A stretch of 52,671 nucleotides of DNA from Octopus bimaculoides (Eukaryota): assembly GCF_001194135.2 (NCBI RefSeq), contig NC_068985.1, forward strand, positions 70,330,839 to 70,383,509, in the 5' to 3' direction. The notes beneath the pieces were generated by a model. That model saw only the letters and a program-made list of their open reading frames with translations. It was not told the DNA's origin and did not search any database. Positions 185-45,224 of this stretch are shown piece by piece. The translations under genes and the position numbers were made by a program. The first letter of the stretch is position 1, and each line of letters starts with the position of its first letter.

Positions 185-260
185 GTGTGCGTGTGTGTAT
201 GTGCGTGTGTGTGCGTGTGTGTGTTCGCGTGTGTGAGTGGCTGTGTGTGAGTAAGTGTGC
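153..260. repeat. (TG)n microsatellite
   Basis: Imperfect TG dinucleotide run; source of the spurious VC/HT ORFs. Confidence 0.95.
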
Positions 261-5120: not shown

Positions 5121-5410
5121 TATAGATACATTCACACGCACACGCCTCCCACATAAACACTCACACACACACCATTCTTACTTATACACACATGCTTGCA
5201 TCGGTCATTTCATCCTTTTGAACCGTTATTCACTCCACATTCTTTTCTCTCTCCGTTTTTTCTCGTTCGCTCTGCATTTTGTTCCTCTCAGCCCTTTCCG
5301 TCGAACAGCGTCGGCTCCAACCGTCAAAGACATTTCTTATCTTCCTGAGCGTCAAGTTAATACACCTACGTGTTGTAACCTCACCAGACTTCGTTTTCTA
5401 TAAATCTGAA

Positions 5411-8020: not shown

Positions 8021-8415
8021 AGAAAGAGAAAAAACAATTTGTATATCTTTCTTAATGTGGACATACTAAAGAAAAACAGAATACTGCGGTATTCATCTTC
8101 ACAAAGCATCTTCTGTAAACGTATAACCGATACTGCTATGAGGCAAAGAAGAATTATTAACTGTGGTGAAATTGCTACTGACATTATTGTCTTATTTAGC
8201 ACTATACGTCAATAAGAGATGCTTTCTCAAAACGAGTATCGTAGTATTGCGGCTTTCTTACAGTATATCCACCTTAAGTAAGATATACACTTTGCTTCTC
8301 TGAAGCAATACTGCTTCAGTTCCTAATAACGAAAAGGTTCGTACATATAAGTATGCGTGCGTGCGTGCGTGCACAGAGAGAGAGAGAGCGCGATGAATAA
8401 AGGAAGGGGAGGGAC

Positions 8416-8495
8416 AGACAGACGAACAGACAGACAGTCAGACAGACGGACAGACAGACAGACAGACAGATTGACAGACAGGCAGATAGATAGAT
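8416..8495. repeat. (GACA)n/(GATA)n tetranucleotide array abutting the Tx1 3' end
   Basis: Direct reading. Confidence 0.9.
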
Positions 8496-8496
8496 A

Positions 8497-10685
8497 ACTT
8501 TCTTTATTGGCCACACAGGGCTGAACATAGAGAGGACAAATACAATGTAGAGCTTTTTCTTCTAGTGGGGGTGGCGAAAACAAACAAAAGTAAAATAAAT
8601 AAAAATAGGGACAACGATCAAAAGGGATCGAAATCGTATGGGATATACAAAAGTCGAAATAATACAACAAGTTCCTAAAGTGAGGAGGTTTATCCGAGGA
8701 AAGAAAAACCTACGAAAAGACCACGGTAACCTCGGCCAATGATGTCACACAATAACACATTTACAAGTAGGTAACTCTGGTTTTTTCTTTGCTTTTTCTA
8801 GTTCATAGGAATATGGTCAAGGTGGCTCCGTCATTCACACATGCCATCCTTGCTACATTCACCCATCTTTTGTTGAAGCATTCGTTATAGACAAAACTTC
8901 CCCCTCTACTATTACCTTCCTTTTCAAGTGATACTTGAAGAAGTTGGTGTGAGATTGACCAGAGAGGAAAGTGTGTGTCTCTAGTCTTTTCAGACGCGTC
9001 CACCAGAACATTCTTTCACCGTAGCCACAAGTACGATGAAAATGGCTCTTCCTTCCCGTTTGAAGGAAGGAGACGAGACAATATTGATGATAGACTCGGC
9101 TGATAAACCGACTCGTCCCACACGTGACAGCAGTCGTTCGACATAAGCCCACTTGTCGGAAATAGTTGGACACTGCAGGAGTGCATGCAGATCGGTTTCG
9201 TCGCTCTGTAGGACTTATCCCGAACAGGTAGCGCTTTTTGATAGCACTGCCAGGCCAGGGATCTCTGGAAGTTGTCCATAGGTCTCGGCCCGAAAGTCCT
9301 CTTGAACAGGTGGATCAGGAGTTCCTCGTCAACACCCAGGATCGCCCCGAGATCGTTGTCGTACTTCCCCTCCAGTAATCCCCTATAGAATGCTTTGGAT
9401 GTGATACAGTCGCTCAAGGTCGACCCGAAACGGCATAGTTGCTCGAGAGCAATGTGACACTCGTGGTGTCATTCGCCCTTCCTCGACCTCTTCTTGATCC
9501 ACGACTGCAGTTCGGGCATGGAGATGAGCTGCGGGAAAGCGCACTGCACAAACGGCGACAACATCTGTCCACCGTCGTCTACGTAGAGCTGGAGATGTCG
9601 CAGTCTCAGTGCATATCTGCGCTTCATCAACCACGGCATGCCCAGCCTTTCTTTTAGCGGGTGTTGGTAGCAAACGAATCACCTGACCGTCGGAGCGCTT
9701 CCTTTCCACAAGAAGCGGAAGAAGATACGTTCCAGTTTGGTGATGGTAGGATCGGAACAAGGCACGACGGTCAGGCGGTAGTAGATGACAGACGCGATGT
9801 ACACGTTCGCCACCTCCACCCGACCTTTTAGGGACAGCTTCTTCTCGGCCCATTGCCGAGAGAGAGGGGACATCCTACTCGTTATCTCGTCCCAGTTCTT
9901 CTCCGTTTCGAGGTTCAGACCAAACCAGACCCCGACAACCTCATCGGACCGTCGGTCCAGCATCTCACTACGGAGGCGCTGCTAGACGGCATAAGCTTGC
10001 TTCTCCAGGTGCCGAGCTGCAAGCCCACTGACTTTTCACGGTTGATTTTTGCCCCCGTTGCCGCTTCGTAGTCTTTCAATGTCCCGCCGACCAGGTCCAT
10101 GTACCCGCGACTAGATTCTATGATGGTGACGTTGTTCGCGTATGTGGACCCGCTCGTCCTGCACCCAAGTTCTCGCGGGAAGCCTCTCAGCGTCGCCAGC
10201 TTCCGCAGAAGTGGCTCGAGAATCAATACGTACAGAAGTGACGAGAGAGGGCATCCCTGACGGAACGAACGTGAATTACTGAACGGATGCCTCTGTAGAA
10301 GGCAGCCATCTAGCCACTGAAGACAGGACCGAAACCGGCTGCTATGAAGACAGCCTCCAATTGTCGATGATCTACCCTATCGAATGCTTTGGATTGATCT
10401 AAATTGATCAGGGCCCCACCCACGTCAGGTTCCTTAACTACCCTGTCTATGATGTAGCGTATCAGATGGAGGTTGTCGTGGATGCTCCGTCCCGGAACGG
10501 CGCACGTTTGCGCTTTGTTGACTAGTTTCTCGATGACAAGCGCCAACCTATTGGCTAACACCTAGTCCAAAATTTTCAAATCTGCATTGATCAGTGATAA
10601 GCCTAAAGTTATCTATTACGTCCCCCTTGTTTGGATCTATCTTTAGCAGCGTTCCGGCTCCTCGGCTCACAAAACCGGGGATGCT
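8497..10685 (-). mobile_element. 5'-truncated non-LTR retrotransposon, L1/Tx1 clade (ORF2 RT to C-terminus plus 3' UTR), inactivated
   Basis: Minus-strand motifs across frameshifts: TLLKIDPNKGDVIDNFR, LANRLALVIEKLV, PGRSIHDNLHLIR, LINLDQSKAFDRVDH, SVRQGCPLS, YANNVT (decayed YADD), AKINREKS, HALLQC (CxxC half of the Zn knuckle deleted). ORF2 stop at ~8803; AATAAA at 8503-8508. Confidence 0.92.
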
Positions 10686-10689
10686 CCAG

Positions 10690-10860
10690 TTTTGCTGGTG
10701 GTGGTGGAGGTGGCGGTGGTGTCAGTTGTAGCAGTTGAAGTTGAAGTAGTGGTGTTGGTGTTGGTGGTACTGTCTTCGGTGGAGGTCATGGTGGACGGCT
10801 TTGCGATGATATTGTTTTTGTTGGTGGTGATGTTGGTGTTGGTGGTAGTACTGGGATTCA
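10690..10860. repeat. (GGT/GTT)-rich low-complexity tract
   Basis: Direct reading; would encode poly-Thr on the minus strand. Confidence 0.8.
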
Positions 10861-11242
10861 TGTTTACGTCTGTATTCGTTCTTTTTAAATTTATCTCCAC
10901 CGTCCTCCTTTCATCAACATGTGGTAGAGAGAGGGTAGGAAAGTTGATGTCAAACGTGTCTCCAAGGAGACTGGCATTTGTCATTATACAAAAACTGTCT
11001 TCATGGCTTGAAGACGCCATCCTCCAATGAAAATGGCTAAGCAAGCCGAAAACAAATTCACAAAACTAGGAAATATGCCACAGAGGGCAAGTTTCCATGC
11101 TGAAACAATTTGCAAGATCGAAAGCATCAGTTGTTGCACAACTTTTACATAAAAATATATTATACAAGACACACTTTTGAAAGCCAAACAAAAAAACAAA
11201 TGCGAACTTACTCGGAATCGATTTGACTATCAACTGTCCATA

Positions 11243-11300
11243 AGATAGAGAGACAGACAAATAGATAGATAGATAGATTGATAGATAGATAGATAGATAG
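11243..11300. repeat. (GATA)n array
   Basis: Direct reading. Confidence 0.95.
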
Positions 11301-11512
11301 TATTTTTTATTGCATAAAAACCGACTTATTAAAATTGACAAAAATAAACGAATATTTATTTGTAAATTTTCTTAAGAAAAAAATTAAAGAACGGAAATAC
11401 ATCAATTGCTTTCCATTTTGTAGCAAACTTTGAAAAGAAGAAATTGCCTATTTTCGAAATTGATAGCTTAATGTCATTAATGATTGTGTTGAGAAATTTC
11501 TTTCTTTGAGTA
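11301..11512 (-). mobile_element. Possible short 3' end of a second, AT-rich LINE
   Basis: Minus strand reads ...IINDIKLSISKIGNFFFSKFATKWK..., then GCAATAAAAAATAC immediately followed by (TATC)n, the same end architecture as the Tx1 copy. Protein similarity is weak. Confidence 0.35.
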
Positions 11513-28700: not shown

Positions 28701-29027
28701 NNNNNNNNNNNNNNNNNNNNNNNNNNNNNNNNNNNNNNNNNNNNNNNNNNNNNNNNNNNNNNNNNNNNNNNNNNNNNNNNNNNNNNNNNNNNNNNNNNNN
28801 NNNNNNNNNNNNNNNNNNNNNNNNNNNNNNNNNNNNNNNNNNNNNNNNNNNNNNNNNNNNNNNNNNNNNNNNNNNNNNNNNNNNNNNNNNNNNNNNNNNN
28901 NNNNNNNNNNNNNNNNNNNNNNNNNNNNNNNNNNNNNNNNNNNNNNNNNNNNNNNNNNNNNNNNNNNNNNNNNNNNNNNNNNNNNNNNNNNNNNNNNNNN
29001 NNNNNNNNNNNNNNNNNNNNNNNNNNN

Positions 29028-29070
<43 letters not shown>

Positions 29071-30139
29071 ATAGTGTATACACATGCACATATTTATACA
29101 GACACATACATACACGGAGATGGACACATATATATATATATACATGTATGCATGTATGTGCACATTAGCTTTGTTTACACTTTCATCTGTTTACTTATTC
29201 ATACGGACATTTCTGTGTTTATTTTGTTGCTTGTGTTTCATATTTTTGTAATCGTTCATCGTATTTTGTTTTCTTTTGTATTATTATGTCAGCTGATTTT
29301 AATTAATTATGATTAAGCCCTGTACACTGCCATACTGAGGAAATCAATTAATAATTTGCATGGCTTGGAGAAGCAATATTACATTAACAAGCATGAAAAC
29401 TTAATAACACTAATATTTCAACAGTTGACTAATACAGTTATCGTGCGACGATAATGAACTAATTGTTATTGTGACTAATTACAGTTGATATTATGAGTCA
29501 GTCCATCGCAGAGCAGTGATATCCGCGAGGGAATATAAAATAAAATAAAAATAAAATGTATAGATGAGGTGGGAATAGACGTTTAGAAGTTTCATCTCTT
29601 CCTCTTGTTATAGCTATTGTCAATATTGTCAGTATCGTCGCTGTTGTTGTTATCATTGTTATTAATAACGTTGCCTTAATGTTATCGCGGAGCTGTTGTT
29701 GCTTTTAATGTTTATCTAATTGCTGCTGTTAAACAGTGTGGGGGTGAATTGGCAAAAACACTACGGCAGCTCACTATGATTTTCTTTTCTTTTTATCTCC
29801 ATTTATTTATTTCATTATTTATTTTCGTACTTCTACCTTCTGCGTTCCAATCCTTCTGGCTTTCATTTAGAATTTGCATTCTTCTGGAGCCTGTAAAGAT
29901 AACAGTAGAGCAATGCGTGTCAATTCAATCCGCGATAGTGCAGCCTTTGCCTTATGAATCTGGTGCCCTCTCAAGTCACGACGAAATCAACATGACTACA
30001 TGTGAATATCAAAAGCGAATGATGTAGCGTTAGTATTCGTCTTTGATTTCGCTGATGTTGCATATGTCAACAGGCATTAACGTCACAACAGCTCTTTGTA
30101 CGCACAAACTCACACACACACACATATATCTATGTATGA

Positions 30140-30540
30140 ATCTTTTATCTTTTAATCATTGACTTGCTTCGGTCACTGGACAGCGGCCATGCTGGGGTAG
30201 CTCCTTGAAAGGCTTAGTCGAACAAATCGACTACAGGACATTTTTAAGCGAGGCACTTATTTTATTGGACGTTTTGACGAAGCGCTGGTTACATATACGT
30301 AAACAAACAAACACTGGTTGCCAAGCAGTGGTAGGGACAAACAAGCGCACACAAACGCACACATACACTCACAAATGTATCTATTGGACGGGCTTGTTTC
30401 TGATGCCAAATCTACTCACTAGGCTTTGGTCGACCTGGGTATATATTACAAGACACTTGCCAGCAGTACCACGCAGTGGGTCTAAACCCAGAACTATATG
30501 GTTGAGAATCAATCTTCCTTCCACTCAACCACAACTTGCC
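30140..30540 (-). mobile_element. Diverged SINE, head D family
   Basis: GCGGCCATGCTGGGG...AGTCGAACAAATCGAC...CAAGACACTTGCC...CCACGCAGTGGG aligns with the 7286 copy. Confidence 0.8.
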
Positions 30541-31557
30541 AGTGATTCTGTGGATATACTGTAACATACATATTCGTCAAATACGCATTGAGAAAATAAG
30601 TACAAGCCTGTAAGATAATTGCAGTTGTGTACGTACACGGCTAAACCTTTGAAGCCTGAACCCTCTCAATTTATGTGCATTATTATAATTTCAATAATTA
30701 CCTTATTACTGTTGTGATAAATAAGCATATTTTAGCATGATAGTAACTAAAATAAGACTTGAGCAGTGACGTTTCTCACATGCATTATTGGTAGAATTGT
30801 TTTCGCTGGCACAGTGAAACTTTAATATTTTCCTTTTTCATGCATTATGACTTATAATATGTAAGTGATGAAAGACTGGAACATTAATTATAAAATGAAT
30901 TACATGCATGGAAAATAAATATAATATTTGAATAATGTAATACAATATAGGATAAATCAATTAAAAAGCATCTTATACACAGGAATTTAAAATAAAATGC
31001 TTTCGTGCATTAGGACATATCTGATTGATGACTGGAAACTGAAGCATCAAGATTGTTCACGAAAATCATTTAAAAATCGAGAGAGTCTCCTTGTTTTTTT
31101 ATGCCGTAAAACAATACAATTTGAAACTCAATTCGAATGGATTGAATTATAAAGATAAGCGAAATCACTCTAGAACGGAAATAAACTATTCTTCGAAAAT
31201 AGCCAAAATTATATAATTGCATGTAAAAGAAAATGTCGAAGCATTAATATTTATACATTGAAATTATCTAATTCTCTATATTCTTGTTCCAATATATATA
31301 TATCAAATGATAAAAATTTACACATGAAAAATAACCACTCAAGGCATTACGGGTAAATATCCATTGATGACGCAATAGCTGAACAGGTTACTCAATAAGT
31401 GGGATGTACAATGGCAGAATGGCGTAAATAAAGATGCAGTGACGTAACAGTGACCTCATTCCTTACACTCTTCTATCTAGTCTCCTTGCACTCTCTCTTT
31501 CATTCTTTCATTCATTCTCTCTCTCTCTCTCTCTCTCTCTTTTTATTTTTCTCATTT

Positions 31558-31807
31558 CCCTATTATGACCACCAAACGTCATCAGCACCAAGGCTAAAAA
31601 TAACCTACGCCACTAACACACACACATTACCAAAATTTAAGTCTACTCCAAGATCCACATCAGCCTGTTTACTGCTGTTTGCCACATCGCACGGGCGAAA
31701 CTAGGGAGAGAGGAGAAAAAGAAATGAAGAGATTTTCGAAGCCATTAAAAAAAAACGTAGGTTATTTTTAGCCTTGGTGCTGATGACGTTTGGTGGTCAT
31801 AATAGGG
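31558..31807. repeat. Perfect 52-bp inverted repeat with 146-bp spacer
   Basis: 31558-31609 is the exact reverse complement of 31756-31807. Confidence 0.97.
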
Positions 31808-32620
31808 GATTCCTTGTTGCTAGATTACCCATGTTGAAACAAGATTATAAAATTTGTGGGAAAGACATGTTCAATTATTTCGATTATTGACATGGGCATA
31901 AATTCGTGAACTCGACCATCGCTGGCTTTGAGTTTGTATGTAAAGAAAAATCACTCAATACCAAAGATAACGTTATTCTAACATAATTGCAAGGCCAAAA
32001 ATAAAGAAAACAGTATGTTATATTGACATCAGAACATGACTGCCTCTTATCTGATCAATGACAGAAACATCCAGTAAAAATATTTTTTTCATTTTGTTTC
32101 TTTTACCATGTTTTCTGTATTAATTCCTATCGTACTAAAGGGTTTTGTATTGAGTTCAAATACAGCTAGAATTGCTTTTGCTCTTCGTCATTGCTAATTC
32201 TTCACCAGCGATACAGGGAGTTCGATTCTGTCATTATTCCCGATATTCAACTTCTACTTATAAAAGTTGTAAGCAATTTTTTTGGTTTCGCTTGGAATCC
32301 CAGCGTTTTCTATACAGAATGAGCCTCGATCAAGGTCAATACGTAAAACAAGAAAGCCTGTACACCAAGTATCTCTGTTGTATCACCACCGGCATACAGT
32401 CGATGATGTTTAAAGACTGAATGTGCATAAATCTATCAGGAAAGAAAGAATTTTTTTTTAAATCATACATGATTCCAATTTAACTAAATATTTATATTGG
32501 TCTATTCTATTCTGAAGCCTTATTAATACTTCCGTTAACTGCTTACCTTCTTTTTTATGTAATTTGAATTTCTTTTCCGATTCCTTCCATTCTGACGTGT
32601 TTTTGTCCTATTCCTTAAAA

Positions 32621-32830
32621 GGCGGCGAGCTGGCAGAATCGTTAGCGTGCCGGGCAAAATGCTTATCGGCATTTCGTCTGTCTTTACCTTCTTCATTCAT
32701 ATTGCGCCGAGGTTGAGTTTCATCCTTTCGGGGTCGATAAAACGAGTACCAGTTCAGTACTGGGATGGATTACATCGATTTATCCCCCACCTTCCTCGAA
32801 ACTGCTGGACTTGGACCACAATTTGAAACC
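32621..32830 (+). mobile_element. tRNA-derived SINE, head C + tail Z
   Basis: GGCGGCGAGCTGGCAGAATCGTTAGC...CATCCTTTCGGGGTCGATAAA shared with the 44659 copy; ends ...CACAATTTGAAACC. Confidence 0.85.
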
Positions 32831-35800
32831 AATATATTCTAACCAAACTTCATCTATTCCATCTACTGTAACCAAATATAATTTAATGAAATCTAACTAG
32901 TCTAACTTAAACTACCTTAAATTTATTAGATTGGAGTTGGTTAGCATTCAAAAAGAAAGATTCGGTAGTCTGATGGCTTATATTGTCGTCAAATTTGAAA
33001 TATTTGAAAATTGATGATTTAAAAGATAAAAACCAATGATTTAGTTTGTCTTATTAAACACGTAATGGTGATGACGTCATAGTAGAATATTTTTCTTGTT
33101 TTCAAATTGTCTGAGAAATGAAACAGCCATTTGTGGTATGTCTCTCTTGTGTGTATTAGATATATACTGCTGAAATTTTAAGAAAGTCATTCTATTATTC
33201 TATGGAGCTACACTAAGTTGCTTATATTTAAGCTTGATATTTATATTTTACAGAATATATGATTATATGGTTACATGTCAGTGTTCTGTTTACGGGTAAA
33301 TTGCTGTTACTTATTTTATAAGATGCAGAAAGACAAACACTCAAATTCATATAAGCATTGTTTCGAAAACTCTCAAGAAGTTGTAAAAACTTCTCCTCTT
33401 ACAGAATTAATACCTTCCCCAAAGTGAAATATTTTAAATTTGGATTCGAAACTGCATGACCAAACTGTTTACTTCTTCACCTTCTTGCGACATACCTTAA
33501 TAGGTTTCCTTGTTTTAAAGATTTCTTATGGCTCAATCAAATAGGACATTTATCAAGGCCATCGGATACACTGTAAATCAGCAGGACGAATGCTTGCAAG
33601 AGAGTATATTCTGCTGAAAGTATCCAGAGATCAAGTCGTCGTGTTAAACCGATTGTAGGATTAAATTTATAAGTGAGCATGGCAGGACTATGTGTGGAAA
33701 CAGACGGACATACACTTAGTCGTAACGTAATGTTGTTCCTTAATAAGGCACAAGGCCAGCAATTTCGAGGGACGCATATTAGTCGATACAATGGATAGGA
33801 TACTTCCCGGTATTTGTTTCGGCTCTTCGCTACATGAGTTCAAATTTCGAGGAGATCAATTTTACCATGCATCGCTACGAGGCCGATAAAATCTGTACCA
33901 ATATAGTGTCATGGCGGAAATGTAACAAAGTTTGACCGGAAGCGTCGAGTATTTGTTTCGCACCTTTGCATTCTGAGTTTGAATCCTGCTGTAGCTTAGC
34001 TTACATGGCTTGTAGATTTAACTCGTCTCCCGATTTAATACTGTCTCCTGATGACTCTGGGTTCTTTAGAAAAGTTCATCCTACAGTAAGCATTTGAGCA
34101 ATGTCTCCAGTTTAAGAATGCACTTTTCTTTCCTTCCCTACTAGTCTCAGAAGCCCTACAAAGACTCACATTCATTGTCTTTCCTATGACTAAACATTTT
34201 AAAGAATACAACGTATTGTAAAAGGGATAAGATGTAGGTTCTTCTTTGATGTTACTTCGAAGTCACGGATATCTTCAAGGTTATTCTTTTTGTTGCCTTA
34301 TTTATCATTATTGATGATGCTCCTGCCTTTCATGGGTGTACCTTCCGATGCAACAGGGCAGTTACTCAAGCTGTAGGAATGTTTTCTGTCTAAGGATGTT
34401 CTTTCCTTCTGAGTCTCTTTTCCACTTTGTTGGTGTGGAACAGAGTTTACAGCTATCTCTCTGTTATATACTCACCACCACTGTTTACGGTCATCTGCAT
34501 TATTTTTCCAGCTATCAATTAGTATATTCAACAATGACATAGTCTCCTTGATCACGTTACAGAAGCGTTTTGGGGCGAGGACATTCCGCAATCGCTAATC
34601 ATAGGATTTGTATTGTTATCTAATTTAGCATCATTTTAAACCTTCCAAATGCCGGTGACAAAGATTTGCAATGTCTGTGAGCATTTTCCTGCGTTGATGA
34701 AACTCCCGCTCAAACCTCCGACGCCTAAAAGCAAAAAGGTCTTAGTTCTACAGCTATGAACTTTGTGAATCAAAGATCATAGCTGTATATCTAAGCATCT
34801 TTGCGCAGCGATTGCAGATGGTTATTGCCCAGAGAGTGCACTCGTGAAACAGTCCTACATTACTTCATAGACGACCCCACCTTACCCCACAAAAGGCAAG
34901 ATGTTGCTCCAAAACAAAGATTTGCTAAGATAGAAGCATGAGATTGGTTATATGCGCAAATTTGTTCAAATATCGTTATGCTTCGTGTAGAGACCATAAA
35001 CCCAGCCTCTCATACCGTCAAAAACACTTCGAAAAGTCCATGACTGCAACAAGTAGAACGCAATGTTTCGATAGCCTATTCATGGAACTGTGACGCGAGT
35101 TTATTATTTTACCAGCATCCTCGGAAGAAATTAAGTTTGTAATAAATAATTAGCTAAAACATTAATTCAATGAACGTATTTCTTACTCATATTGTCAGGT
35201 TGTAATTTAGTGGCATTTATCTCGCATTTATGCGCATTAAGTGCAACTCCCATTCAGATCAACAACGCTTTTTATTCATTTTGATATCGATTAGATAAAC
35301 TTAACAGTCTAAATTGGTGGGTTAATGAAGTATGCCTTAGTTCTTTCGCATCTTTGTTTTCTAGTTCTGTTGTGGTAGACTTAACACGTCACACAATTTA
35401 ACACTATCTGGTACTTCGGTTCCCCTAACAGAGTTCACTATTTTTTCTAAGCATTTTAGCCAGATAAGCTGGACGCAACTTATTTCCTTCCTACCATTAG
35501 TATCGGTGGCCCTAAGAAAATAAAAGTCTATGGATGATGTTGATCTCTCTCTCTTTCAATAAACGATTGAAAATATGAGAGGGCATTCAAATCGAAGTTG
35601 TGGAGAGTACTGTTGAAATTTAGCCCGAGTAGCTTTGTCGAACTGATCAAAAGAATGTCTTCCATTATCATCCTGTTTTTCTTATTGCTAATTGAAGCTT
35701 GATCTAGCAGACCTGGGATGAAATCCATTTGAACCATGACGATCTCATTAGGTGAAACAATACTGAATACACTTTTACCTCTTTATTACGATAGGGTGTG

Positions 35801-36680
35801 ATTTGTTGGAGATTTGGCTACTATTATTAACAAGCCGAACCATTATATACTGCTTTGCGTCGGCTCGGACGTGTTCCTGAAATTGGTTGATATAAGTTTC
35901 GATTCAATTGTTTTCGGGGTAAAATCTTGGACAGTGTTTTGTATTTCTCTAAAGTATATATAGGGTTAATGGGTTAAAAAACTTAAGGTTTGCCTCAAGC
36001 CTTGAAACTCATTTAACCAGATACTATCACAGTTCTGACTTGGTAGGGTGACTATCAGTTCTGAGTTTCATTTATCTAAACAGGATACCTATACGCCAAA
36101 AGGCTAAATAAACACCAGCTAGTTAGGGACTTATAAAAGAGAACACAGTTCATAATGTACAATTAAATGCCCTTAAGAAGACCGGGAGATCTTGAATGGA
36201 AATCTTGAATGGAACGTATATCACCAGGGCACTGTTAGATCAGTGCTTATCTTTCGCTAAACTACAACCTCAACGCAATGGCCAGCACGGACATGTTTCG
36301 TTTAATCTATGTGAAATAGCATCCAAACTTCCTTCAAATCATACTTCACATTCTGAAAAACAGGGTTCATTAGATAATATATGCTTACATAACCTCAGAA
36401 AGAGGGAATGATCACGTATGAAATGTGTTTCCATATGGGTTTGCTTAATCACGATTACCCTCTGATTCAACATCAGTAATAATGTGAAGAGGGCTATGGT
36501 AACGCACGTCTCTAAAACCGAGATAAATACCTGCCAAATTAACCGAATACCAGCACATTGCAAAAACGAAGATAAATAAGGAAAAGTAGATGAAATTATT
36601 TCCTTGTTTTTGTACTTGTCTTTATTATTGTTACAGGCGTTGTTTGTGTTGGTGTTATTGTTTTTTTTTCTCTTCTGCTG

Positions 36681-36978
36681 CTCTTCTTCTTCTTCTTCTT
36701 CTTCTTCTTCTTCTTCTTCTTCTTCTTCTTCTTCTTCTTCTTCTCCTTCTTCTTTTTCTTTTTCTTCTTCTCCTTCTTCTTTTTCTTCTTCTTCTTCTCC
36801 TTCTTCTTTTTCTTCTTCTTCTTCTTCTTCTTCTCCTTCTTTTTCTTCTTCTCCTTCTTTCTCTTCTTCTTCTTTTTCTTCTTTTTCTTCTTCTTCTTCT
36901 TCTTCTTCTTCTTTTTCTTCTTCTTCTTCTTCTTCTTCTTCTTCTTCTTCTTCTTCTTCTTCTTCTTCTTCTTCTTCT
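36681..36978. repeat. 298-nt uninterrupted pyrimidine tract, (TTC)n with variants
   Basis: Only C and T on the + strand between the G at 36680 and the G at 36979. Confidence 0.95.
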
Positions 36979-38260
36979 GCTACGTCATGGTATTCGTCGC
37001 CGTCGTCGTCGTCATCATCGTTATCGTCGTAATCATCATCATCATCACCATCGTTATCATCATCATCGTCAGCATCGTCGAAGTCGTCTTCTATGCCAAC
37101 ATTTTCCTCCTATTCAGACGGTCTTATGAACAAAAACCATTTCAGACGTCAAGAAATGTGCCCCTGGCTACCTCATCTAATGTTTTTGATCTATAAGAAG
37201 ATAAAGAGAAATTGGAAGTTCGCAGGCTGCTGTTTATAGTAGAATGAATAAAGATATAGTAGTTCCCTTCCTGGGTGGGAGAGCTTGTATCTCATCAATG
37301 ATAGCTGCAAGACCGGGATAACGAACATTTGTCGTTCGAATTATTGTGCGTTTGAATAATTTAGAATCTAAATCACCCCGAGCTTTCCTATAAAGAAGGC
37401 AAAGTAACAAAGACAATGGCATTAACCCCAAAAAAAGTCGGAAGGAAGTTGACACTGAAAAACTGAATGTAAGTAGCCAATGTCTATGTCATTCCACTAC
37501 GAAACTACCATTTATCGTCCGTAGCGTCTCCTAATGAGTTTTATAGCCAATGAGAGCAGTTACGCCTCTGATTCCTAAGACAAGACATTACTGACTAGAA
37601 TATAATTTGCTCTATGAAGCTACATTTTGAATCATGATATGCATTTTGGGTCTGTGCTCAAATATGTGCTAAGTCTATGAAATCTCCAGAGATTACAAGG
37701 TGCCTTATTCATTTGAAAGGAAAGCTTTCTTTCAGAACTTCTCTTTGGTAGATTATCAGAATCGGAAATATGAGAAATATGTGAACTAAGAGTAAACATT
37801 CGGCATGAGAATGATGTCCTAACACGCACAGCGTTCAACTGATTGGCTAGGGACTTCTATCGATCAAAGTTCTCGTTGTCAATATAGTGTCATTAAAAAC
37901 GTGACTGACTATTACCACGAATTTAATATATGCGTTAACAATATCATGTAATTCAGAATATTACGAATGACACTTTCAAGCCAATTATTATAAAATAACT
38001 TTCTGAAATCGTTGTCCTGAAGTTGCTACGCGTGACGGAGCTGTGTGCCATAAGTTTGAAAATCACGGAGTTTAAAGAGTGGTAATATATTCGTAGATAC
38101 AATATAGGAGGAGAAACTTATAAATCTACCCTCATCAAATAAAGCAGCAGTTCTTTCACTGCTGAATTTTAGCAAACAATTGATATGCAGCATACTTTAG
38201 ATTAACATTGCCACAAACACCATGGCAAAATTGATCCAATAACATTTGGTTATAAGTCAA

Positions 38261-38517
38261 GGGTGACTGTTATGTAGCCTAGTGGTTAGGGTGTTGTTCT
38301 CAGGATTGGAAGAGTGTGGTTTGTATACGGAGTACAGGCAATGTACTGTGTTCTTGAGCAAAACACTTCATTTTATGTTCCTCCCAAATCTACTCAACTC
38401 GCAGAAATGGATAATCCTGCAGCAGACCGGTGTTTTGTCTCAGAAGGGAAAATGTACACAACATAATCCATGAAATCAGCCTTCTGAGCCTATGAATATG
38501 ATACGGGCAAAACTTTG
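38261..38517 (+). mobile_element. Diverged tRNA-derived SINE, head A + tail Y
   Basis: TAGCCTAGTGGTTAGGGTG A-box and GTGTTCTTGAGCAAAACACTT. CTCCCAAATCTACTCAACTCGCAGAAATGG resembles CTCCAGTCTATTCCGCTGAAGAAAATGAG in the 2356 copy. Confidence 0.6.
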
Positions 38518-39459
38518 TTATCTCGAAATCTATTTTAACTGTTTAGATTTATAAAGAAAAGATTTCATCCGGCACATTCCACCTTTTTGTACATCAAGGA
38601 CTACAGTATCTAAAGTTTACGTTTACTATTGTCTTGCAGAAAGGAAAGATACGATTTATGTTGCACATACACCTCCAAAGAACACGCATACATATATACA
38701 CAAAGTCACAGACACACACACACACGTACGTATACGTGTATATCAGAGTGTCTCTCTGTCTGTCTTTCTGTGTGAATACATGTCTGTATGTACGTCCATA
38801 TATGTATGCCTATGTATGTATGTATGCATGTATGTATGCATGTATGTATGCATGCATGTATGTATGTATGTATGTATGCATGTATGTATGTATGTACGTA
38901 TGTATGTATTATGTATATATATAATGCTACGGGTTGATCAATAGTTTTTATATCAATAGTACGTATCAAATGGAATTAAATTCAAAGCCTACCAACACAA
39001 TACCAGATGCTGAAATTTCTGATCCTCAGACACACGAATAATAGTTTCAAATCTTAGTGTCAACTTCATCTATAAGAAATAGACTGGGAGATTAACATTG
39101 ATGTATGAGTATTAGATCAAAGACATAATAACTCATATATATATATATATATATATANNNNNNNNNNNNNNNNNNNNNNNNNNNNNNNNNNNNNNNNNNN
39201 NNNNNNNNNNNNNNNNNNNNNNNNNNNNNNNNNNNNNNNNNNNNNNNNNNNNNNNNNNNNNNNNNNNNNNNNNNNNNNNNNNNNNNNNNNNNNNNNNNNN
39301 NNNNNNNNNNNNNNNNNNNNNNNNNNNNNNNNNNNNNNNNNNNNNNNNNNNNNNNNNNNNNNNNNNNNNNNNNNNNNNNNNNNNNNNNNNNNNNNNNNNN
39401 NNNNNNNNNNNNNNNNNNNNNNNNNNNNNNNNNNNNNNNNNNNNNNNNNNNNNNNNNNN

Positions 39460-39545
<86 letters not shown>

Positions 39546-39863
39546 ACATATATGTACTGTGTGGGTGTAGGTGTGTGGGTGTGAAAGTGCGTGGATGTGT
39601 GTGAGTGTGTGAAAAGAAAAGGATAGATTATTTGATAGTTGCATACATTTAGTTGCGTATATATACGTTCAAGTGAGCACATTCCCTTGCTGTCACAGAG
39701 ACACACTGCACAACAGAACCCCTTCGTATTTATATGCGTTTCTCTGTGTATTTGTATGTGATGAAGTGTATATAAATTGATGTACATATAATATTATATA
39801 CGCACACATATACATAAGCGCTTATACGTATACATACACACATACACAAAGATACACACACAC

Positions 39864-39896
<33 letters not shown>

Positions 39897-41286
39897 CGCA
39901 TATATGTATATACACGTATAACAACGTGTGTAAATAAATATAAGCATATATATATATATATATATANNNNNNNNNNNNNNNNNNNNNNNNNNNNNNNNNN
40001 NNNNNNNNNNNNNNNNNNNNNNNNNNNNNNNNNNNNNNNNNNNNNNNNNNNNNNNNNNNNNNNNNNNNNNNNNNNNNNNNNNNNNNNNNNNNNNNNNNNN
40101 NNNNNNNNNNNNNNNNNNNNNNNNNNNNNNNNNNNNNNNNNNNNNNNNNNNNNNNNNNNNNNNNNNNNNNNNNNNNNNNNNNNNNNNNNNNNNNNNNNNN
40201 NNNNNNNNNNNNNNNNNNNNNNNNNNNNNNNNNNNNNNNNNNNNNNNNNNNNNNNNNNNNNNNNNNNNNNNNNNNNNNNNNNNNNNNNNNNNNNNNNNNN
40301 NNNNNNNNNNNNNNNNNNNNNNNNNNNNNNNNNNNNNNNNNNNNNNNNNNNNNNNNNNNNNNNNNNNNNNNNNNNNNNNNNNNNNNNNNNNNNNNNNNNN
40401 NNNNNNNNNNNNNNNNNNNNNNNNNNNNNNNNNNNNNNNNNNNNNNNNNNNNNNNNNNNNNNNNNNNNNNNNNNNNNNNNNNNNNNNNNNNNNNNNNNNN
40501 NATATATATATATATATATATATACAGGTTTGTATTTATGTATCACCTGACTTTGTTAATCTACACATCCAGAATTAATACGTTGCTTTTGTTTTCGTTA
40601 GTTTTTGTAGTTTAATTTTCTTCATTTTATATTCCCCCCCACCTTATTTTTCGCTTTATTTTGCACACTAGTTTTGCTTTCTGGTTTCTTTTCTGTTCTT
40701 TCTTTTTTTGATTCTTACTTTTATTCTTCGGTTTTTTGATTTTTGATTTTGCTTTATCTCTTCTGGATACTCCAAGACTTTGCCAATAATTGATTCTCTC
40801 GCTCTTCTCACCTTTGATCAATACCATATGCCTGAGGTGAGTTATTTGCTGGTTTTTAGAAACACTTCTTTCTCTTCTGTCAGCCTATTGAAATCGATGT
40901 TTTACCAGCTGTCTTCCACCTTTCTTTTTCTTTTTTTTTATTTGTGTTGTTGTCTTATTAGTTAGATTGGCCGACCTACTGGAATGTCTTTCCGTAACAC
41001 TTAAAACTTAACAACTTATACATCGAGAAAGGAAGCAAAACAAATCAAGAAGTAAGATTCCTACCCATAAAGAAAACAAAAAAGAAAAAGAAAAGAAGAA
41101 AATCTTTATTATTTGTTTCATAGTATTTTTTCGTATATTTAATTCAGGATTATTTTTTTTATATATACATACATAAACACACACATGATACTCACACACA
41201 GCCACATATGCACACAGACTAAGACACACTCACACACACTCACACAAACACACAAAGATGGATATCTATTCGCGTGCTTGTGTGTC

Positions 41287-41318
<32 letters not shown>

Positions 41319-41627
41319 CTGTGTGTATGTATGTATATATNNNNNNNNNNTATATACAAATATTATATATGACTATACATAAATATATATGAATATACAT
41401 ATATATATATATGAAAATACATATATATATAGGTGTATATATATCTATACATTTATACGTATATATATATATATATATGTATGTGTGTATGTTTGTATAT
41501 GTATGTATGTATATGTATATATCTGCACAGATACGTATAGTGATGCATAAATATATATAGGCATATACATCCATATATGAATTTGTGTGTATGTGTGTAT
41601 GTATGTGTTTGTGTGCGCGCGCATATA

Positions 41628-41659
<32 letters not shown>

Positions 41660-43266
41660 CGTGTTTGTATGTGCCTGTGTGTACCAATGACTGTCTGCGC
41701 GCGTGTACATTTATATTTTTCTCATAGTTAGTGAATCTGCCATATTGGATCTGATAGATATCACACTGGTCATCTGATGAAGCTTTTGTGTTAAAGTAAC
41801 TTTTCTATTGCTTGTATGGAACATAGCTTACTATTCTGTATAACATATACAAATTTATGACGGCTGCCAACCAAAGCTTTACGCTCAAACTTCAACCTAA
41901 CATGTCGCTCGTTCGTGTGTGCGTGTGTGTGTGTATTTGTGTGTGAAAATGAATAAAAAAATATATAAATAACTGTATTTATATGTACACATACACAGAT
42001 ACGTATACACACATAATGATATACGTGTGAGTGGAGGAATTGTAGATTGGACTGCGTGACAGTAATTTCGTTGCTCTAAACTAGCAATACTCACGATTTG
42101 GGTAATTTCCTACAGCCTTGTGTAACAACATTGAAGCTACCGAGTTAATCTTTGCGAACAAATTTGGCCCACATCACAGCAAGCTTGTTCTTTCCTCTCG
42201 TTATCAATGGTTTATTCGCACCAAACTACAGCCACTTCATGTAGTGATAACTTCTGTTTTTATATATATCTTGCAGAAAACTTGTTATTCGTTCTGAGCT
42301 TTGGTATTTTCTATCAAGCCTTCGTCACATCCACGATGAGGAGTTATCTATTTCCCTCAGTGGTTTGTCAATCATTGATCTTCCATTACATTCAAATATA
42401 ATGTCAGCTTGCTAAGTCATTGCCGATCAAGCTAAAACGCACATTATCGCACCTTCACACGATGCAGCGCATAGCCATCCGTCTGCTGCCCACACTTCTC
42501 TTTGTTCCTGATACTCTTTCTTATATTTCAGATATTTGAAGCCACTTTTTGATTGTATTCTCTCCATATTTTCTCCTAGTGGCAAGGTTAACTGAATTAT
42601 CAAAATTTCTTTCTCAAGTCACGTTTTGCCATGGGGCTGGTTTGCTGCGTTTCTTCAATATAATTTGGAAATGCAAGTGCTTCCACAATCTATCCATACT
42701 TTCCAATAATTAGCGCAACCAGATTTCTAGATGCTGCTTGGCGTTTATCTCATCCTCATAGTGCCTAGCATGTGGGAAGCAGCAGGTTGAATATTGGTCT
42801 CGTTTCTCATCGTTGGAATTGGATTATGTTATATTAATTATTTACTGGAACAGATTACTCAAGATTTTGATACCTTCCATGTTGCCTGATACAACTTCAC
42901 TAATATGTAACCCCCGGAACGAAATCACCAAACATTCTAAGACCACCATGACATATCAGTCGGGCATGAAACAACATCATTCACAGCTGCCAATAGACAT
43001 TTTGGCTACAATTTACACAATATCTGATACTGTGTATATTCACTAAATTTCCAACTCTACATTTTCCACCACACATTCTTTCCATTCAATATTTTATTTC
43101 GAATAACTATGGCCGGAATATTTTTTCCTTTTTTTTTTTTTTTTTTTTACCCTTGTGTTATATCTGTCCCACTTCAAAAAGCATTTTGTCCTTCATTTCC
43201 AGGCTAGAACCACCATTTCATTATCTATATCCTTTCGGCAGACGCTATTGTCTGAGTGGCACATAT

Positions 43267-43357
43267 AATTGGTCTACAGAATCTTGCAGAATCATACAAT
43301 TGTTCTACAGAATCTTGTAGAATCATACAATCGGGCTACAGAATCTTGTAGAATTAT
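43267..43357. repeat. 31-bp minisatellite, about 2.9 copies
   Basis: AATTGGTCTACAGAATCTTGCAGAATCATAC / AATTGTTCTACAGAATCTTGTAGAATCATAC / AATCGGGCTACAGAATCTTGTAGAATTAT. Confidence 0.9.
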
Positions 43358-44630
43358 GTGAAGATATTTAATATGTTTCGTTAGTCTTCTCAGATATTAG
43401 TGACGTGTATGTTTATATCACGTCGTAAAAATTTATGCCATATTTGAATATTCCTGAAAACAGCATTGTCTATATTTCGTCTTGGGTGTTTATTTTCTTT
43501 TGATTTTCTGCATATGATATTTTCATTTTTCAAACAATTTAGTTCCTTTTAATATTGATCATTATTTACTGAAATTGATGATTAGTTAGACCCTTAAACA
43601 GCCTTAAAGTTTAACACCACCACTCATACCCCCAGGTAACTTTCCTAAACTCGATCCACTTTCAAGAATTTGAAGCAGGTCTGAGAGTTCTTGATGAGTT
43701 CACACATATCACTGCAATCGAAACCATGAAATGTCTTTTAAGATATTCATCCTGCTAGAAATAGTGGCTTAGCATAATGTCCATCAAACCACACCATAGT
43801 GTCTAAATAAAGGCAAGCTTTATACATAATATATTTTCTGATATGCAAAAAGATGCGTAAGCCATGACTAGAAACCATTTGAACAATTCCGAGAAATTGT
43901 AATCTATAACAAACTATGATTCCTGGAGCCCTTCTCCACATTTTTCGGCAGCTTCGAAGACAGCAAGATATGGGCGTTGCCATTATATAAAAATTAACTG
44001 AACCGTCAATCAGTGCCTTATTTTTCGTATTTTGTTTCAGTAAGTTATTATATCACATCAAATAACATCGATATTTTAAAATCTACATCAATGTAAAACA
44101 TTTATACTAGTCTCATTTCACGAGACCCCTGAAAATTGAAATTGCTATCCATCCGACTATATATCATTTCAATGGTACTTATCGCCTTTACATTCTAAGG
44201 AGAGGAGGTTCAAAATTTGATTACAGCTTCCAGTCTATGAGATTAATTTTGCGGAAGAATTTGCGTACGTTTCCATTGAAACTCCAATTACAGGAAATTG
44301 TGAACCGGGAATGCGAACAGTCAATAATAAGGCTCAGACGCATAGAACGTTATAAACGCATAGACGGACATGCATACACATGTTCTGACATACACACATG
44401 TATACATTGGTATATACAAGCACATACACAGGCACACACAAACATACACTCACACAACTATATTGTTTTCATGTAAGCTCAATCAGAAACCATTCCAGCA
44501 TCTAAGATTTTACATTAGTAAAGTTAAGTTTGTTATCTAAACTCTAAATCAAGCATCGAATATTTCTTTCGTAAGTACACACATACATACATACAAATAT
44601 CTGCATGCATGCATGCGTATGTATGTATGT

Positions 44631-45224
44631 GTTGGCCGTGGTGGTAAAGAGTGGTAAAGGCTGCGAGCTGGCAGAAACGTTAGCACGCCAGGTGAAATGC
44701 TTTGCGGTATTTCGTCTGCCGTTACGTTCTGAGTTCAAATTCCGCCGAGGTCGACTTTGCTTTTCATCCTTTCGGGGTCGATAAATTAATTACCAGTTAC
44801 GCACTGGAGTCGATGTAATCGACTTAATCCTATTGTCTGTCCTTGTTTGTCCCCTCTATGTTTAGCCCCTTTTGGGCAATAAAGAAATAGGTAAAGAGTT
44901 TAATTCCCAATCACAGGGTCCTTGATTCTGTCCTACTGCGTTGCAAGTGTCTTCTACTATAGCCTCCAGCCGACCAAAGACTTAGCAGCGGATCTAGAAA
45001 TTGAATGAAGACTGTTGTGTGTTTATATATATACATACGTTTGTGTGTGTGTTCTTCTCCACTGCTTGACAACAGGTGTAGGTATGTTTACCTCCCCATA
45101 ACTCATCATTTCGGCAATAGAGAAGAATCGACTAAGTACCAGATTTGATTACTTCTACCAATATTCCTAGAAGGGGTGCCCAAGCATGGCCACAGTCTAA
45201 TAACCAAAACAAGTAAAAGTAAAA
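44631..45224 (+). mobile_element. Old head-D SINE split by a younger SINE insertion
   Basis: Head start at 44631-44652 resumes at 44890 (TTTAATTCCCAATC...GCAAGTGTCTTCTACTATAGCCTC) and runs to ...CAAGCATGGCCACAGTC...AAACAAGTAAAAG. Confidence 0.75.
44653..44889 (+). mobile_element. tRNA-derived SINE, head C + Tx1-like tail, with 10-bp TSD
   Basis: GGCTGCGAGCTGGCAGAAACGTTAGC, B box GAGTTCAAATTCC. TSD GGTAAAGAGT at 44643-52 and 44890-99. Confidence 0.9.

What the first reader, a model, noticed from the sequence alone, without database searches (positions are those of the whole stretch)
8500..44886. A tRNA-SINE carries the 3' tail of the L1/Tx1 LINE in this window: candidate SINE-Tx1 partnership
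Seen: SINE 44846-44886 (TTTGTCCCCTCTATGTTTAGCCCCTTTTGGGCAATAAAGAA) matches the reverse complement of Tx1 8500-8540 (TTTGTCCTCTCTATGTTCAGCCCTGTGTGGCCAATAAAGAA) at 35/41 with no gaps. The match lies at the extreme 3' end of both elements and neither has a poly(A) tail. Three of the six mismatches fall in the loop of a small GCC(C)/(G)GGC hairpin just upstream of AATAAA. Known: shared 3' tails mark stringent SINE/LINE pairs (classic for L2, CR1 and RTE), whereas mammalian L1 recognises only poly(A). Inference: this SINE subfamily is mobilised by a stringent Tx1 LINE, which is an uncommon pairing. I cannot tell whether it has been described for this genome.
Basis: partly seen in the sequence, partly recalled or inferred. 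Interest (0 to 1): 0.78.

Follow-up and report, generated by a model that had tools for sequence, protein, structure and literature searches.

The report
Octopus SINE carrying an L1-type LINE tail
A short parasitic repeat (SINE) in this octopus-like genome ends with the same 40-60 bases as an L1/Tx1-type LINE in the same window. The same pairing recurs in several copies in the argonaut genome, so the SINE most likely gets copied by imitating that LINE's tail: a familiar trick with an unusual partner.

Summary
SINE 44846-44886 matches the reverse complement of 8500-8540 at 35/41 without gaps, far above chance. No assembly gap touches either element.

The block is the native 3' end of a 5'-truncated, frameshifted L1-group LINE (10697-8497, minus strand). 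Other copies of that LINE family, from Argonauta hians and from two metagenome contigs, end their 3' UTRs in the same motif followed by differing microsatellites.

The SINE (44653-44889) has a perfect 10-bp target-site duplication, so body and tail inserted as one unit.

The decisive evidence comes from a 22-kb Argonauta locus. It holds six copies of a homologous SINE, three with target-site duplications. Their last ~65 nt match the end of a near-intact LINE at the same locus (score 64 against 18±2 for shuffles). In each species the SINE tail is closest to that species' own LINE.

The partnership is therefore a family-level trait shared by octopods. Three points stay unproven:
- Tx1 rather than plain L1 is supported only by domain architecture.
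- The hairpin is not statistically supported.
- The tRNA origin of the head is not shown.

This is a new member of a known kind. I found no prior description.

The parts
8806..10697 (-). Remnant of the LINE ORF2 (RT and C-terminal zinc-binding region). It is 5'-truncated and has at least 6 frame changes.
   Evidence: tblastn of P0001 residues 260-912 maps to 10697..8806 in seven pieces at 60-68% identity. Pfam RVT_1 scores 2.7e-16. The best solved relative is human L1 ORF2p at 2e-16, against R2 at 1.7e-5.
8497..8805 (-). LINE 3' UTR (~300 nt).
   Evidence: It lies between the end of ORF2 homology and the terminal AATAAAGAAAGT.
8499..8540 (-). LINE 3'-terminal block shared with the SINE: TTTGTCCTCTCTATGTTCAGCCCTGTGTGGCCAATAAAGAAA.
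   Evidence: The same terminal motif occurs in related LINE copies L002/L127, L005 and L003.
8411..8496 (-). (TATC)3(TGTC)n microsatellite directly abutting the LINE 3' end.
   Evidence: Related LINE copies end in (ATT)n (L005) or (CA)n (L003).
44643..44652 (+). 5' copy of the SINE target-site duplication, GGTAAAGAGT.
   Evidence: perfect 10-bp direct repeat with 44890-44899.
44653..44889 (+). SINE, 237 bp. It has a head with a B-box-like GAGTTCAAATTCC at 44731-44743, a Deu/Nin-DC-type core (CATCCTTTCGGGGTCGATAAA at 44765-44785) and a LINE-derived tail.
   Evidence: It is homologous to Argonauta SINE-A from the B box through the core and tail.
44830..44889 (+). SINE tail homologous to the LINE 3' end.
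   Evidence: In alignment columns 24-64 it matches the window LINE at 33/41, the Argonauta B-type consensus at 30/41 and the Argonauta LINE at 25/41.
44890..44899 (+). 3' copy of the SINE target-site duplication, GGTAAAGAGT.
32612..32830 (+). Context only: a second copy of the same SINE superfamily with a different tail, which shows that the tail is modular.
   Evidence: BLAST gives 76.6% over 171 nt of head and body. The tail is not significantly similar to the LINE end.

Best explanation
The window holds one decayed copy of an L1-group (Tx1-like) LINE and one copy of a SINE whose last ~45-60 nt derive from that LINE family's 3' end.

Proposed mechanism, by analogy with stringent LINE/SINE pairs:
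1. The LINE's ORF2 protein recognises the terminal sequence of its own RNA. This is the conserved ...TCT-TGTT..GSCC-CTTGT-GGSY-AATARAGAAAT(C) block, possibly presented as a small stem-loop.
2. It nicks an AT-rich target and starts reverse transcription there, without needing a poly(A) tail.
3. The SINE transcript carries the same terminus, so the enzyme accepts it in trans and inserts it with 10-15-bp target-site duplications.

Shown here:
- The tails are homologous and lie at the extreme ends of both elements.
- The tail is native to the LINE family.
- The SINE moved as a unit, body plus tail.
- The pairing is a family-level trait, also present in Argonauta, with the best match within each species.

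Inferred: recognition of the tail by ORF2p, the direction of tail capture (LINE to SINE), and Pol III transcription of the SINE.
For: Tail identity is far above chance.

The LINE belongs to the L1 group:
- The window remnant matches RVT_1 and human L1 ORF2p best.
- The intact Argonauta relative matches L1 ORF2p at 3e-51 against R2 at 1e-26, and L1 endonuclease entries at about 1e-5.
- Its ORF2 carries Exo_endo_phos, RVT_1 and zf-RVT.

The terminal motif sits at the end of contiguous ORF2 plus 3' UTR sequence in the window, in L002/L127, L005 and L003. It is also present in a second LINE family at 36% amino-acid identity. The flanking microsatellites differ between copies.

The window SINE has a perfect 10-bp duplication enclosing body and tail.

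The Argonauta 22-kb locus has 11 tail motifs, 6 of them on SINE-A copies. Three SINE-A copies have duplications of about 9-15 bp. The SINE-A consensus against the LINE 3' UTR scores 64 against 18.3±2.4, with 0 of 500 shuffles reaching it, over ~65 nt ending at the last base of both.

The window SINE and Argonauta SINE-A align from the B box through the Deu-type core and the tail. The best tail match is within each species.

The SINE-A consensus (238 nt) has no run of four T, which is compatible with Pol III transcription.
Against: - Only one SINE copy with this tail and one LINE copy lie in the window, and I could fetch no further sequence from the window's own genome. Family-level support for the window's species is therefore by homology with Argonauta.
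- Other SINE copies of the same superfamily carry a different tail that is not similar to this LINE end. These are window 32612-32830, the fragment at 33730-33800, and the pieces inside O. bimaculoides proteins P0121 and P0122. This LINE clade is therefore not shown to be the partner of those copies.
- The hairpin is weak. The 4-bp stem is paired in 85.9% of cells against 83.4% in shuffles (92 of 500 reach it). There is one two-sided change. RNAalifold predicts no pairs, and single-sequence z-scores run from -1.0 to +0.45.
- The window SINE copy has TTTT at two places, one in the tail loop. These would terminate Pol III if present in the source gene. They are probably later mutations.
- No tRNA is detected in the head.
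- The RT was not placed on a tree with reference Tx1 and L1 sequences.
Confidence: 0.78

Rival explanations
1. One-off chimera. The window SINE copy arose once, by template switching of a LINE reverse transcriptase from a LINE 3' end onto a SINE RNA, or by chance juxtaposition. It does not represent a SINE subfamily.
For: Only one such copy is in the window. The other SINE copies in the window have a different tail.
Against: Six Argonauta copies of a homologous SINE carry the homologous tail, joined to the body at the same point, and three have their own target-site duplications. The window copy has a duplication around body plus tail.
Confidence: 0.04
2. The direction is reversed, or the module is shared. 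The LINE families acquired their terminal block from a SINE, or both took it from a third source. Alternatively the block serves 3'-end processing (the AATAAA signal) rather than recognition by the reverse transcriptase.
For: The block contains AATAAA close to the end. The sequence alone does not show the direction of transfer.
Against: The motif is kept at the end of two LINE families whose ORF2 is only ~36% identical, and in LINE copies from several sources. The SINE heads and other tails vary. That is the pattern expected if the LINE is the source and is under constraint. A Pol III SINE has no use for a poly(A) signal, and in Argonauta SINEs the signal is AATAGA.
Confidence: 0.08
3. Relaxed mobilisation. 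The SINE is mobilised through its terminal A-rich stretch or short repeat, or by another LINE. The shared tail is then a historical relic without a present role.
For: L1-group elements of mammals and most plants recognise only poly(A) (PMC3472496). The hairpin has no statistical support. Copies are followed by TAT or by microsatellites.
Against: No poly(A) is present on any LINE or SINE copy seen. The last ~30 nt are the best conserved part of otherwise divergent LINE 3' UTRs. The SINE tail tracks the LINE of its own species.
Confidence: 0.08
4. Chance or low-complexity similarity between two unrelated pyrimidine-rich ends.
For: Both ends are T/C-rich, and the window is full of microsatellites.
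Against: None of 100 dinucleotide shuffles gave even one match. None of 500 shuffles reached the alignment score. Homologous tails recur in another genus.
Confidence: 0.01

Closest known systems
Stringent SINE/LINE pairs with a common 3' tail (for example eel UnaSINE1/UnaL2 and zebrafish L2 pairs; Kajikawa and Okada 2002, Hayashi 2014, as cited in PMC4824008 and PMC4176376)
   Same: The SINE's extreme 3' end is homologous to the partner LINE's extreme 3' end. There is no poly(A), short repeats follow the end, and target-site duplications are present. A small terminal stem-loop has been proposed.
   Different: The partner here is an L1-group (Tx1-like) LINE, not L2, CR1 or RTE. The stem-loop is only 4 bp and is not statistically supported here. 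No assay has been done.
L1-clade stringent pairs in green plants and algae: maize/sorghum SINEs with LINE1-1_ZM, and Chlamydomonas SINEX-3_CR with L1-1_CR (Ohshima 2012, PMC3472496)
   Same: [quoted passage not shown]
   Different: Those cases are in plants and an alga, and the Chlamydomonas pair ends in poly(A) repeats. The present pair is in an animal (cephalopod), has no poly(A), and its LINE has a CCHC-type ORF1.
Crocodilian SINEU families mobilised by Tx1-Mar LINEs (Kojima 2015, PMC4494074)
   Same: It is a SINE/Tx1-clade partnership in animals.
   Different: That partnership was inferred from shared target preference (Mariner-N4_AMi) and shared U1/U2-derived 5' heads, not from a shared 3' tail. 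The SINE heads derive from snRNA. No target-sequence specificity is evident here.
Mollusc SINEs with highly conserved domains (Deu, Nin-DC, Meta, V, CORE) and their partners (PMC4758252, PMC4824008, PMC11481361)
   Same: The design is modular: head, conserved central domain and an exchangeable LINE-derived tail. One superfamily can carry several tails.
   Different: The partners reported in bivalves and gastropods are CR1, CR1-Zenon, L2 and Nimb. No L1/Tx1 partner was reported, and no partner was reported for octopus SINEs in the papers searched.
Mammalian L1 with Alu/B1 (relaxed recognition)
   Same: The autonomous element belongs to the L1 group. The SINE is non-autonomous and is inserted with target-site duplications.
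   Different: Mammalian L1 needs only a poly(A) tail and shares no sequence with Alu. Here a specific terminal sequence is shared and poly(A) is absent.

Membership tests
SINE/LINE pair with shared 3' tail (stringent type) | The SINE 3' end is homologous to the LINE 3' end, above chance. | tested here: met
   35/41 ungapped. Score 54 against 13.3±2.1 (0 of 500 shuffles) in the window. Score 64 against 18.3±2.4 (0 of 500) for the Argonauta SINE-A consensus against the LINE.
SINE/LINE pair with shared 3' tail (stringent type) | The homology reaches the extreme 3' terminus of both elements, and the tail is native to the LINE family. | tested here: met
   The SINE ends 3 nt after the block, at its target-site duplication. 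The LINE ends 2-3 nt after it, at a microsatellite. Other LINE copies, including a second LINE family, have the same terminus.
SINE/LINE pair with shared 3' tail (stringent type) | The tail is present in many SINE copies (family level), each inserted independently. | tested here: met
   Six SINE-A copies lie in one 22-kb Argonauta locus, three with duplications of about 9-15 bp. In the window's own genome only one copy could be examined.
SINE/LINE pair with shared 3' tail (stringent type) | No poly(A) tail; short repeats or a defined end instead. | tested here: met
SINE/LINE pair with shared 3' tail (stringent type) | The LINE reverse transcriptase needs the tail for retrotransposition in cis and in trans. 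| not testable with these tools
   This needs a retrotransposition assay.
SINE/LINE pair with shared 3' tail (stringent type) | A conserved terminal stem-loop supported by covariation. | tested here: inconclusive
   The 4-bp stem is paired in 85.9% of cells against 83.4% in shuffles (92 of 500 reach it), with one two-sided change. RNAalifold predicts 0 pairs. Single folds show the hairpin, but z-scores are only -1.0 to +0.45.
L1 group of non-LTR retrotransposons | ORF2 with an N-terminal APE endonuclease, an RT and a C-terminal Cys/His motif. The RT is closest to L1 among solved structures. | tested here: met
   The Argonauta relative carries Exo_endo_phos, RVT_1 and zf-RVT. L1 ORF2p scores 3e-51 against R2 at 1e-26. 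L1 endonuclease entries score about 1e-5. The window remnant scores L1 ORF2p 2e-16 against R2 1.7e-5.
Tx1 clade (within the L1 group) | The RT clusters with reference Tx1 elements in a phylogeny. | not tested
   No labelled Tx1 reference sequence was available through the tools. Published octopus repeat annotations list both L1-Tx1 (80 families, 56 Mb) and L1 (60 families, 11 Mb).
Tx1 clade (within the L1 group) | ORF1 of the RRM/zf-CCHC type (a Type I variant), not Transposase_22. | tested here: met
   Argonauta ORF1 (L127 7120-8550, 476 aa) contains CFICQKPGHLKSVC, a CX2CX4HX4C knuckle. Pfam zf-CCHC scores 0.0037, below the curated cut-off. There is no Transposase_22 hit. Ivancevic 2016 (PMC5203782) states that such variants in animals are consistent with Tx1. 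No ORF1 survives in the window copy.
Tx1 clade (within the L1 group) | Target-sequence-specific insertion (true of many, not all, Tx1 elements). | tested here: inconclusive
   The flanks differ between copies. 8 of 11 Argonauta tails are followed by TAT, and LINE ends abut different microsatellites. This suggests a weak AT-rich preference at most.
tRNA-derived SINE | The head is derived from a tRNA, with A and B boxes. | tested here: inconclusive
   ARAGORN finds nothing at default settings and gives only inconsistent calls at 70% thresholds. Rfam shows no tRNA match at E up to 10. A B-box-like GAGTTCAAATTCC (window) and GTGTTCGAATCCC (Argonauta) are present.
Deu / Nin-DC SINE superfamily | A conserved central domain shared across phyla. 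| tested here: inconclusive
   The 21-mer CATCCTTTCGGGGTCGATAAA is exact in at least 120 metagenome contigs from a non-octopus animal, with different heads and tails. The literature classes the abundant octopus SINEs as tRNA-Deu. I made no direct comparison with the published Deu consensus.

The most novel reading that the evidence does not exclude
A lineage of L1/Tx1-group LINEs in octopods uses stringent, sequence-specific recognition of its 3' end. It has been parasitised by at least one, possibly two, SINE families since before the Argonauta-Octopus split, with the tails co-evolving within each genome. This would be an animal example of the proposed ancestral 'stringent L1' state. It would also mean that part of the octopus-specific SINE expansion ran on L1/Tx1 machinery.
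Probability: 0.5. Interest if true: 0.65.

Novelty: new member of a known kind. Interest (0 to 1): 0.5.

Why it matters
SINE/LINE tail sharing is textbook for L2, CR1 and RTE but rare for the L1 group. [quoted passage not shown] The one reported Tx1-SINE partnership, crocodilian SINEU, rests on target preference rather than on a shared tail.

An animal L1/Tx1 lineage with a conserved non-poly(A) terminus copied by SINEs would support the idea that sequence-specific 3'-end recognition is ancestral in the L1 group and was relaxed later. It would also give a tractable system for testing that idea, because the Argonauta element is nearly intact.

It also assigns a candidate autonomous partner to some octopod SINEs. 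These repeats make up about 12% of octopus genomes, and the papers I could search name no partner for them.

Tried and rejected
- **Metagenome scan with the SINE core 21-mer.** It returned 120 contigs, all from another animal host whose SINEs share only the central domain. That was useful for classifying the core but useless for the tail, and it consumed the single scan.
- **Six-frame translation of the SINE as a protein query.** I hoped to recover SINE-derived ORFs with genomic context. It found only two O. bimaculoides UniRef proteins with exonised SINE pieces carrying a different tail. P0121 is not on record with DNA.
- **Viral contig scans with a SINE pattern and with the LINE protein.** Nothing was found.
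- **Locus of P0012 on a 708-kb ENA contig.** It has 43% GC and no SINE, so it is a different organism.
- **A second protein search with the intact relative P0001.** It found no further close family members.
- **Is the commoner octopus SINE tail (…AAATTGCTGGCCTTGTGCC…) also derived from this LINE end?** This looked plausible by eye. Alignment scores of 12-20 fall mostly within the shuffle range, with at best 9 of 500 shuffles as high. Rejected as unsupported.
- **Hairpin covariation and an extended three-stem fold.** The fold appears in single-sequence predictions but is not significant.
- **tRNA detection in the SINE heads.** Negative or inconsistent.
- **Target-site duplication of the window LINE.** None is recognisable next to the microsatellite.
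- **Species of assembly GCA_024449705.1.** Not found in the papers.

Full report
**Observation**

SINE 44846-44886 and the reverse complement of 8500-8540 agree at 35 of 41 positions without gaps, and BLAST extends the match to 42 nt. Three tests put it far above chance:
- A 24-mer from the block with up to three mismatches occurs only at these two sites. None was expected in dinucleotide-preserving shuffles.
- A local alignment of the two 84-nt ends scores 54, against 13.3±2.1 for 500 shuffles.
- A profile of the tail finds only these two places in the window.

The assembly gaps flagged by the scan's program (listed) all lie outside both elements and their flanks. The nearest are more than 3 kb away. 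The finding's long span is only a bounding box, so continuity across gaps does not matter here.

**The LINE**

On the minus strand, 10697 to 8806 encodes the equivalent of residues 260-912 of an intact relative (P0001), in seven pieces with frame changes. The copy is therefore 5'-truncated and dead.
- It matches Pfam RVT_1.
- Among solved structures it is closest to human L1 ORF2p (2e-16, against 1.7e-5 for R2).
- Its closest database relatives are octopod: 60% identity to a protein from NCBI assembly GCA_024449705.1, 55% to Argonauta hians, and 52-61% to proteins from metagenome contigs.
- After the stop there is a ~300-nt 3' UTR ending ...GCCCTGTGTGGCCAATAAAGAAAGT at 8497. A (TATC)3(TGTC)n microsatellite follows at once. 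There is no poly(A).

**Is the block the LINE's own end?**

Yes. I fetched the contigs that encode the close relatives. Wherever the 3' UTR is complete it ends in the same motif:
- L005: ...CCGGGCCCTTGTGGCCAATAAAAGAAATC, then (ATT)n
- L003: ...GTCCTCTTGTGGCCAATCAA, then (CA)n
- Argonauta...TGTCGGCCCTTGTGGCTAATAAAGAAATC

A second, much more divergent LINE at the Argonauta locus (36% amino-acid identity) ends in ...TGTGGGCCTTTATGGCCGATCTAGAAATT. The terminal ~30 nt are the best conserved part of otherwise poorly alignable UTRs.

**Clade of the LINE**

The Argonauta copy (L127 7120-12285) is nearly intact:
- ORF1 is 476 aa with a CX2CX4HX4C knuckle and no Transposase_22 domain.
- ORF2 is about 1200 aa with one in-frame stop. 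It carries Exo_endo_phos, RVT_1 and zf-RVT.
- Its RT matches human L1 ORF2p at 3e-51 against R2 at 1e-26. Its endonuclease matches L1 endonuclease entries.

This places it in the L1 group. According to Ivancevic et al. 2016 (PMC5203782), an ORF1 of the zf-CCHC type in an animal L1-group element is consistent with the Tx1 clade. Published octopus repeat annotations list L1-Tx1 as the larger of the two L1-group classes. I could not place the RT on a tree with labelled Tx1 references, so 'Tx1' is likely but untested.

**The SINE**

The element is bounded by a perfect 10-bp direct repeat, GGTAAAGAGT, at 44643-44652 and 44890-44899. That gives a 237-bp insertion, 44653-44889. Its parts are:
- a head with a B-box-like GAGTTCAAATTCC;
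- a central domain containing CATCCTTTCGGGGTCGATAAA;

Body and tail therefore retrotransposed as one RNA.

The central 21-mer is exact in at least 120 metagenome contigs from another animal, with unrelated heads and tails. This fits the Deu/Nin-DC type of conserved SINE domain, and the literature calls the abundant octopus SINEs tRNA-Deu.

A tRNA origin for the head is not shown. ARAGORN and Rfam find nothing at usual thresholds.

**Is the tail a family trait?**

The window alone cannot answer this. It holds one copy with this tail. A second copy of the same superfamily (32612-32830) and a fragment (33730-33800, minus strand) carry another tail. That other tail also appears in SINE pieces inside two O. 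bimaculoides proteins, and it is not significantly similar to the LINE end.

The answer came from the Argonauta locus. BLAST of the window SINE against it hit SINE-like sequences that run through the tail. The enlarged 22-kb locus L127 contains 11 copies of the terminal motif:
- the LINE's own end;
- six copies of a ~240-bp SINE ('SINE-A');
- four 'B-type' ends that match the second LINE family's UTR.

Three SINE-A copies have recognisable target-site duplications of about 9-15 bp, and two B-type elements have duplications of 13 and 16 bp.

The SINE-A consensus aligns to the last ~65 nt of the LINE 3' UTR with a score of 64, against 18.3±2.4 for shuffles (0 of 500). The alignment ends at the final base of both. 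The consensus has no TTTT run, as expected for a Pol III transcript.

The window SINE and SINE-A are homologous from the B box through the central domain and the tail, although their 5' heads differ.

In each species the SINE tail is closest to a LINE of the same species:
- window SINE against window LINE: 33/41 in alignment columns 24-64;
- Argonauta SINE-A against Argonauta LINE: 29/40 in columns 24-64, and 26/31 in the last 31.

This is what co-evolution or repeated re-capture would give.

**The hairpin**

Position 31 changes a stem pair: C-G in the SINE, C·C in the window LINE, and G-C in the LINE copies L005 and Argonauta L127, which makes one two-sided change.

Over 16 tails, however, the 4-bp stem is paired in 85.9% of cells against 83.4% in column shuffles, and 92 of 500 shuffles do as well. 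RNAalifold predicts no consensus pairs. Single-sequence folds place the hairpin inside a longer imperfect stem (TCT.TGTT with AATA.AGA), but with z-scores of only -1.0 to +0.45. The conserved element may be read as sequence rather than structure. The data here cannot decide.

**Mechanism**

The best-supported reading is a stringent-type partnership. The ORF2 protein of this L1/Tx1-like LINE recognises its own conserved 3' terminus, initiates target-primed reverse transcription there without poly(A), and accepts SINE RNAs bearing the same terminus.

The anatomy, the homology, the target-site duplications and the cross-species recurrence are shown. Recognition and mobilisation are inferred by analogy with L2-type pairs.

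Rivals are weak:
- Chance is refuted.
- A one-off chimera is contradicted by the Argonauta family.
- Reversed direction of capture, or a relic tail with relaxed mobilisation, cannot be excluded without experiments. The conservation of the motif across divergent LINE families and the absence of poly(A) argue against them.

**Comparison with what is known**

- Shared tails are classic for L2, CR1 and RTE.
- Kojima (2015) inferred that crocodilian SINEU elements are moved by Tx1-Mar LINEs, from shared targets and shared 5' heads rather than 3' tails.
- Mollusc SINE surveys report CR1, CR1-Zenon, L2 and Nimb partners.
- Octopus repeat papers list L1-Tx1 LINEs and tRNA-Deu SINEs but name no partner.

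I found no description of this pairing. Repbase and Dfam could not be consulted, so prior curation cannot be excluded.

**Verdict**

It is a new member of a known kind of system with an uncommon partner clade. Interest is moderate, highest for people working on LINE 3'-end recognition and on cephalopod genome expansion.

Noticed in passing
window 32612-32830 (+); 33730-33800 (-); 33836-33890 (+): Further copies or fragments of the same SINE superfamily carry a different tail (…CCTCGAAAYTGCTGGMCTTG…). The same tail is seen in SINE pieces inside O. bimaculoides proteins P0121 and P0122. It is not significantly similar to the L1/Tx1 LINE end, and its partner LINE is unknown.
   Followed up: partly
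loci L006-L125 (JGI metagenome contigs): The SINE's central 21-mer, CATCCTTTCGGGGTCGATAAA, is exactly conserved in at least 120 contigs of a non-octopus animal host. The heads and tails there are quite different, so this is a cross-phylum conserved SINE domain of the Deu/Nin-DC type.
   Followed up: partly
window 8411-8496; L005 2020-2105; L003 1768-1781: LINE copies of this family end directly in different microsatellites: (TATC)3(TGTC)n, (ATT)n and (CA)n. In Argonauta, 8 of 11 tails are followed by TAT. This could reflect slippage at the 3' end, microhomology priming or a weak target preference.
   Followed up: no
L127 7120-12285 (Argonauta hians, GCA_054771915.1 BAAFZT010000001.1): A near-intact L1/Tx1-like LINE. 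ORF1 is 476 aa with a CCHC knuckle. ORF2 is about 1200 aa with a single in-frame stop at 9869-9871. A second, 5'-truncated 3'-UTR copy follows, ending at 12650. The database protein (P0002, 670 aa) covers only the C-terminal part.
   Followed up: partly
L127 ~215-1284 (-) and 5124-5385 (-): A second LINE family (36% amino-acid identity) has a related terminus. A 262-bp element flanked by a 13-bp target-site duplication matches the end of that family's UTR over its last ~105 nt, while its first ~157 nt do not. It is a candidate second SINE family using the same LINE clade.
   Followed up: partly
LINE 3' UTRs: window ~8560-8585 (-), L003, L004, L005, L127: A second conserved module, CCCCCC-(T)ATT-GGGG(A)ATTT, lies about 50-150 nt before the LINE 3' end (nearest in the window copy). 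It is absent from the SINE tail, so it is probably not needed for mobilisation in trans.
   Followed up: no
window 44579-44632: An imperfect palindromic ACAT/ATGT microsatellite just 5' of the SINE gives weak sub-threshold hits to several miRNA families on both strands. This is a low-complexity artefact.
   Followed up: yes
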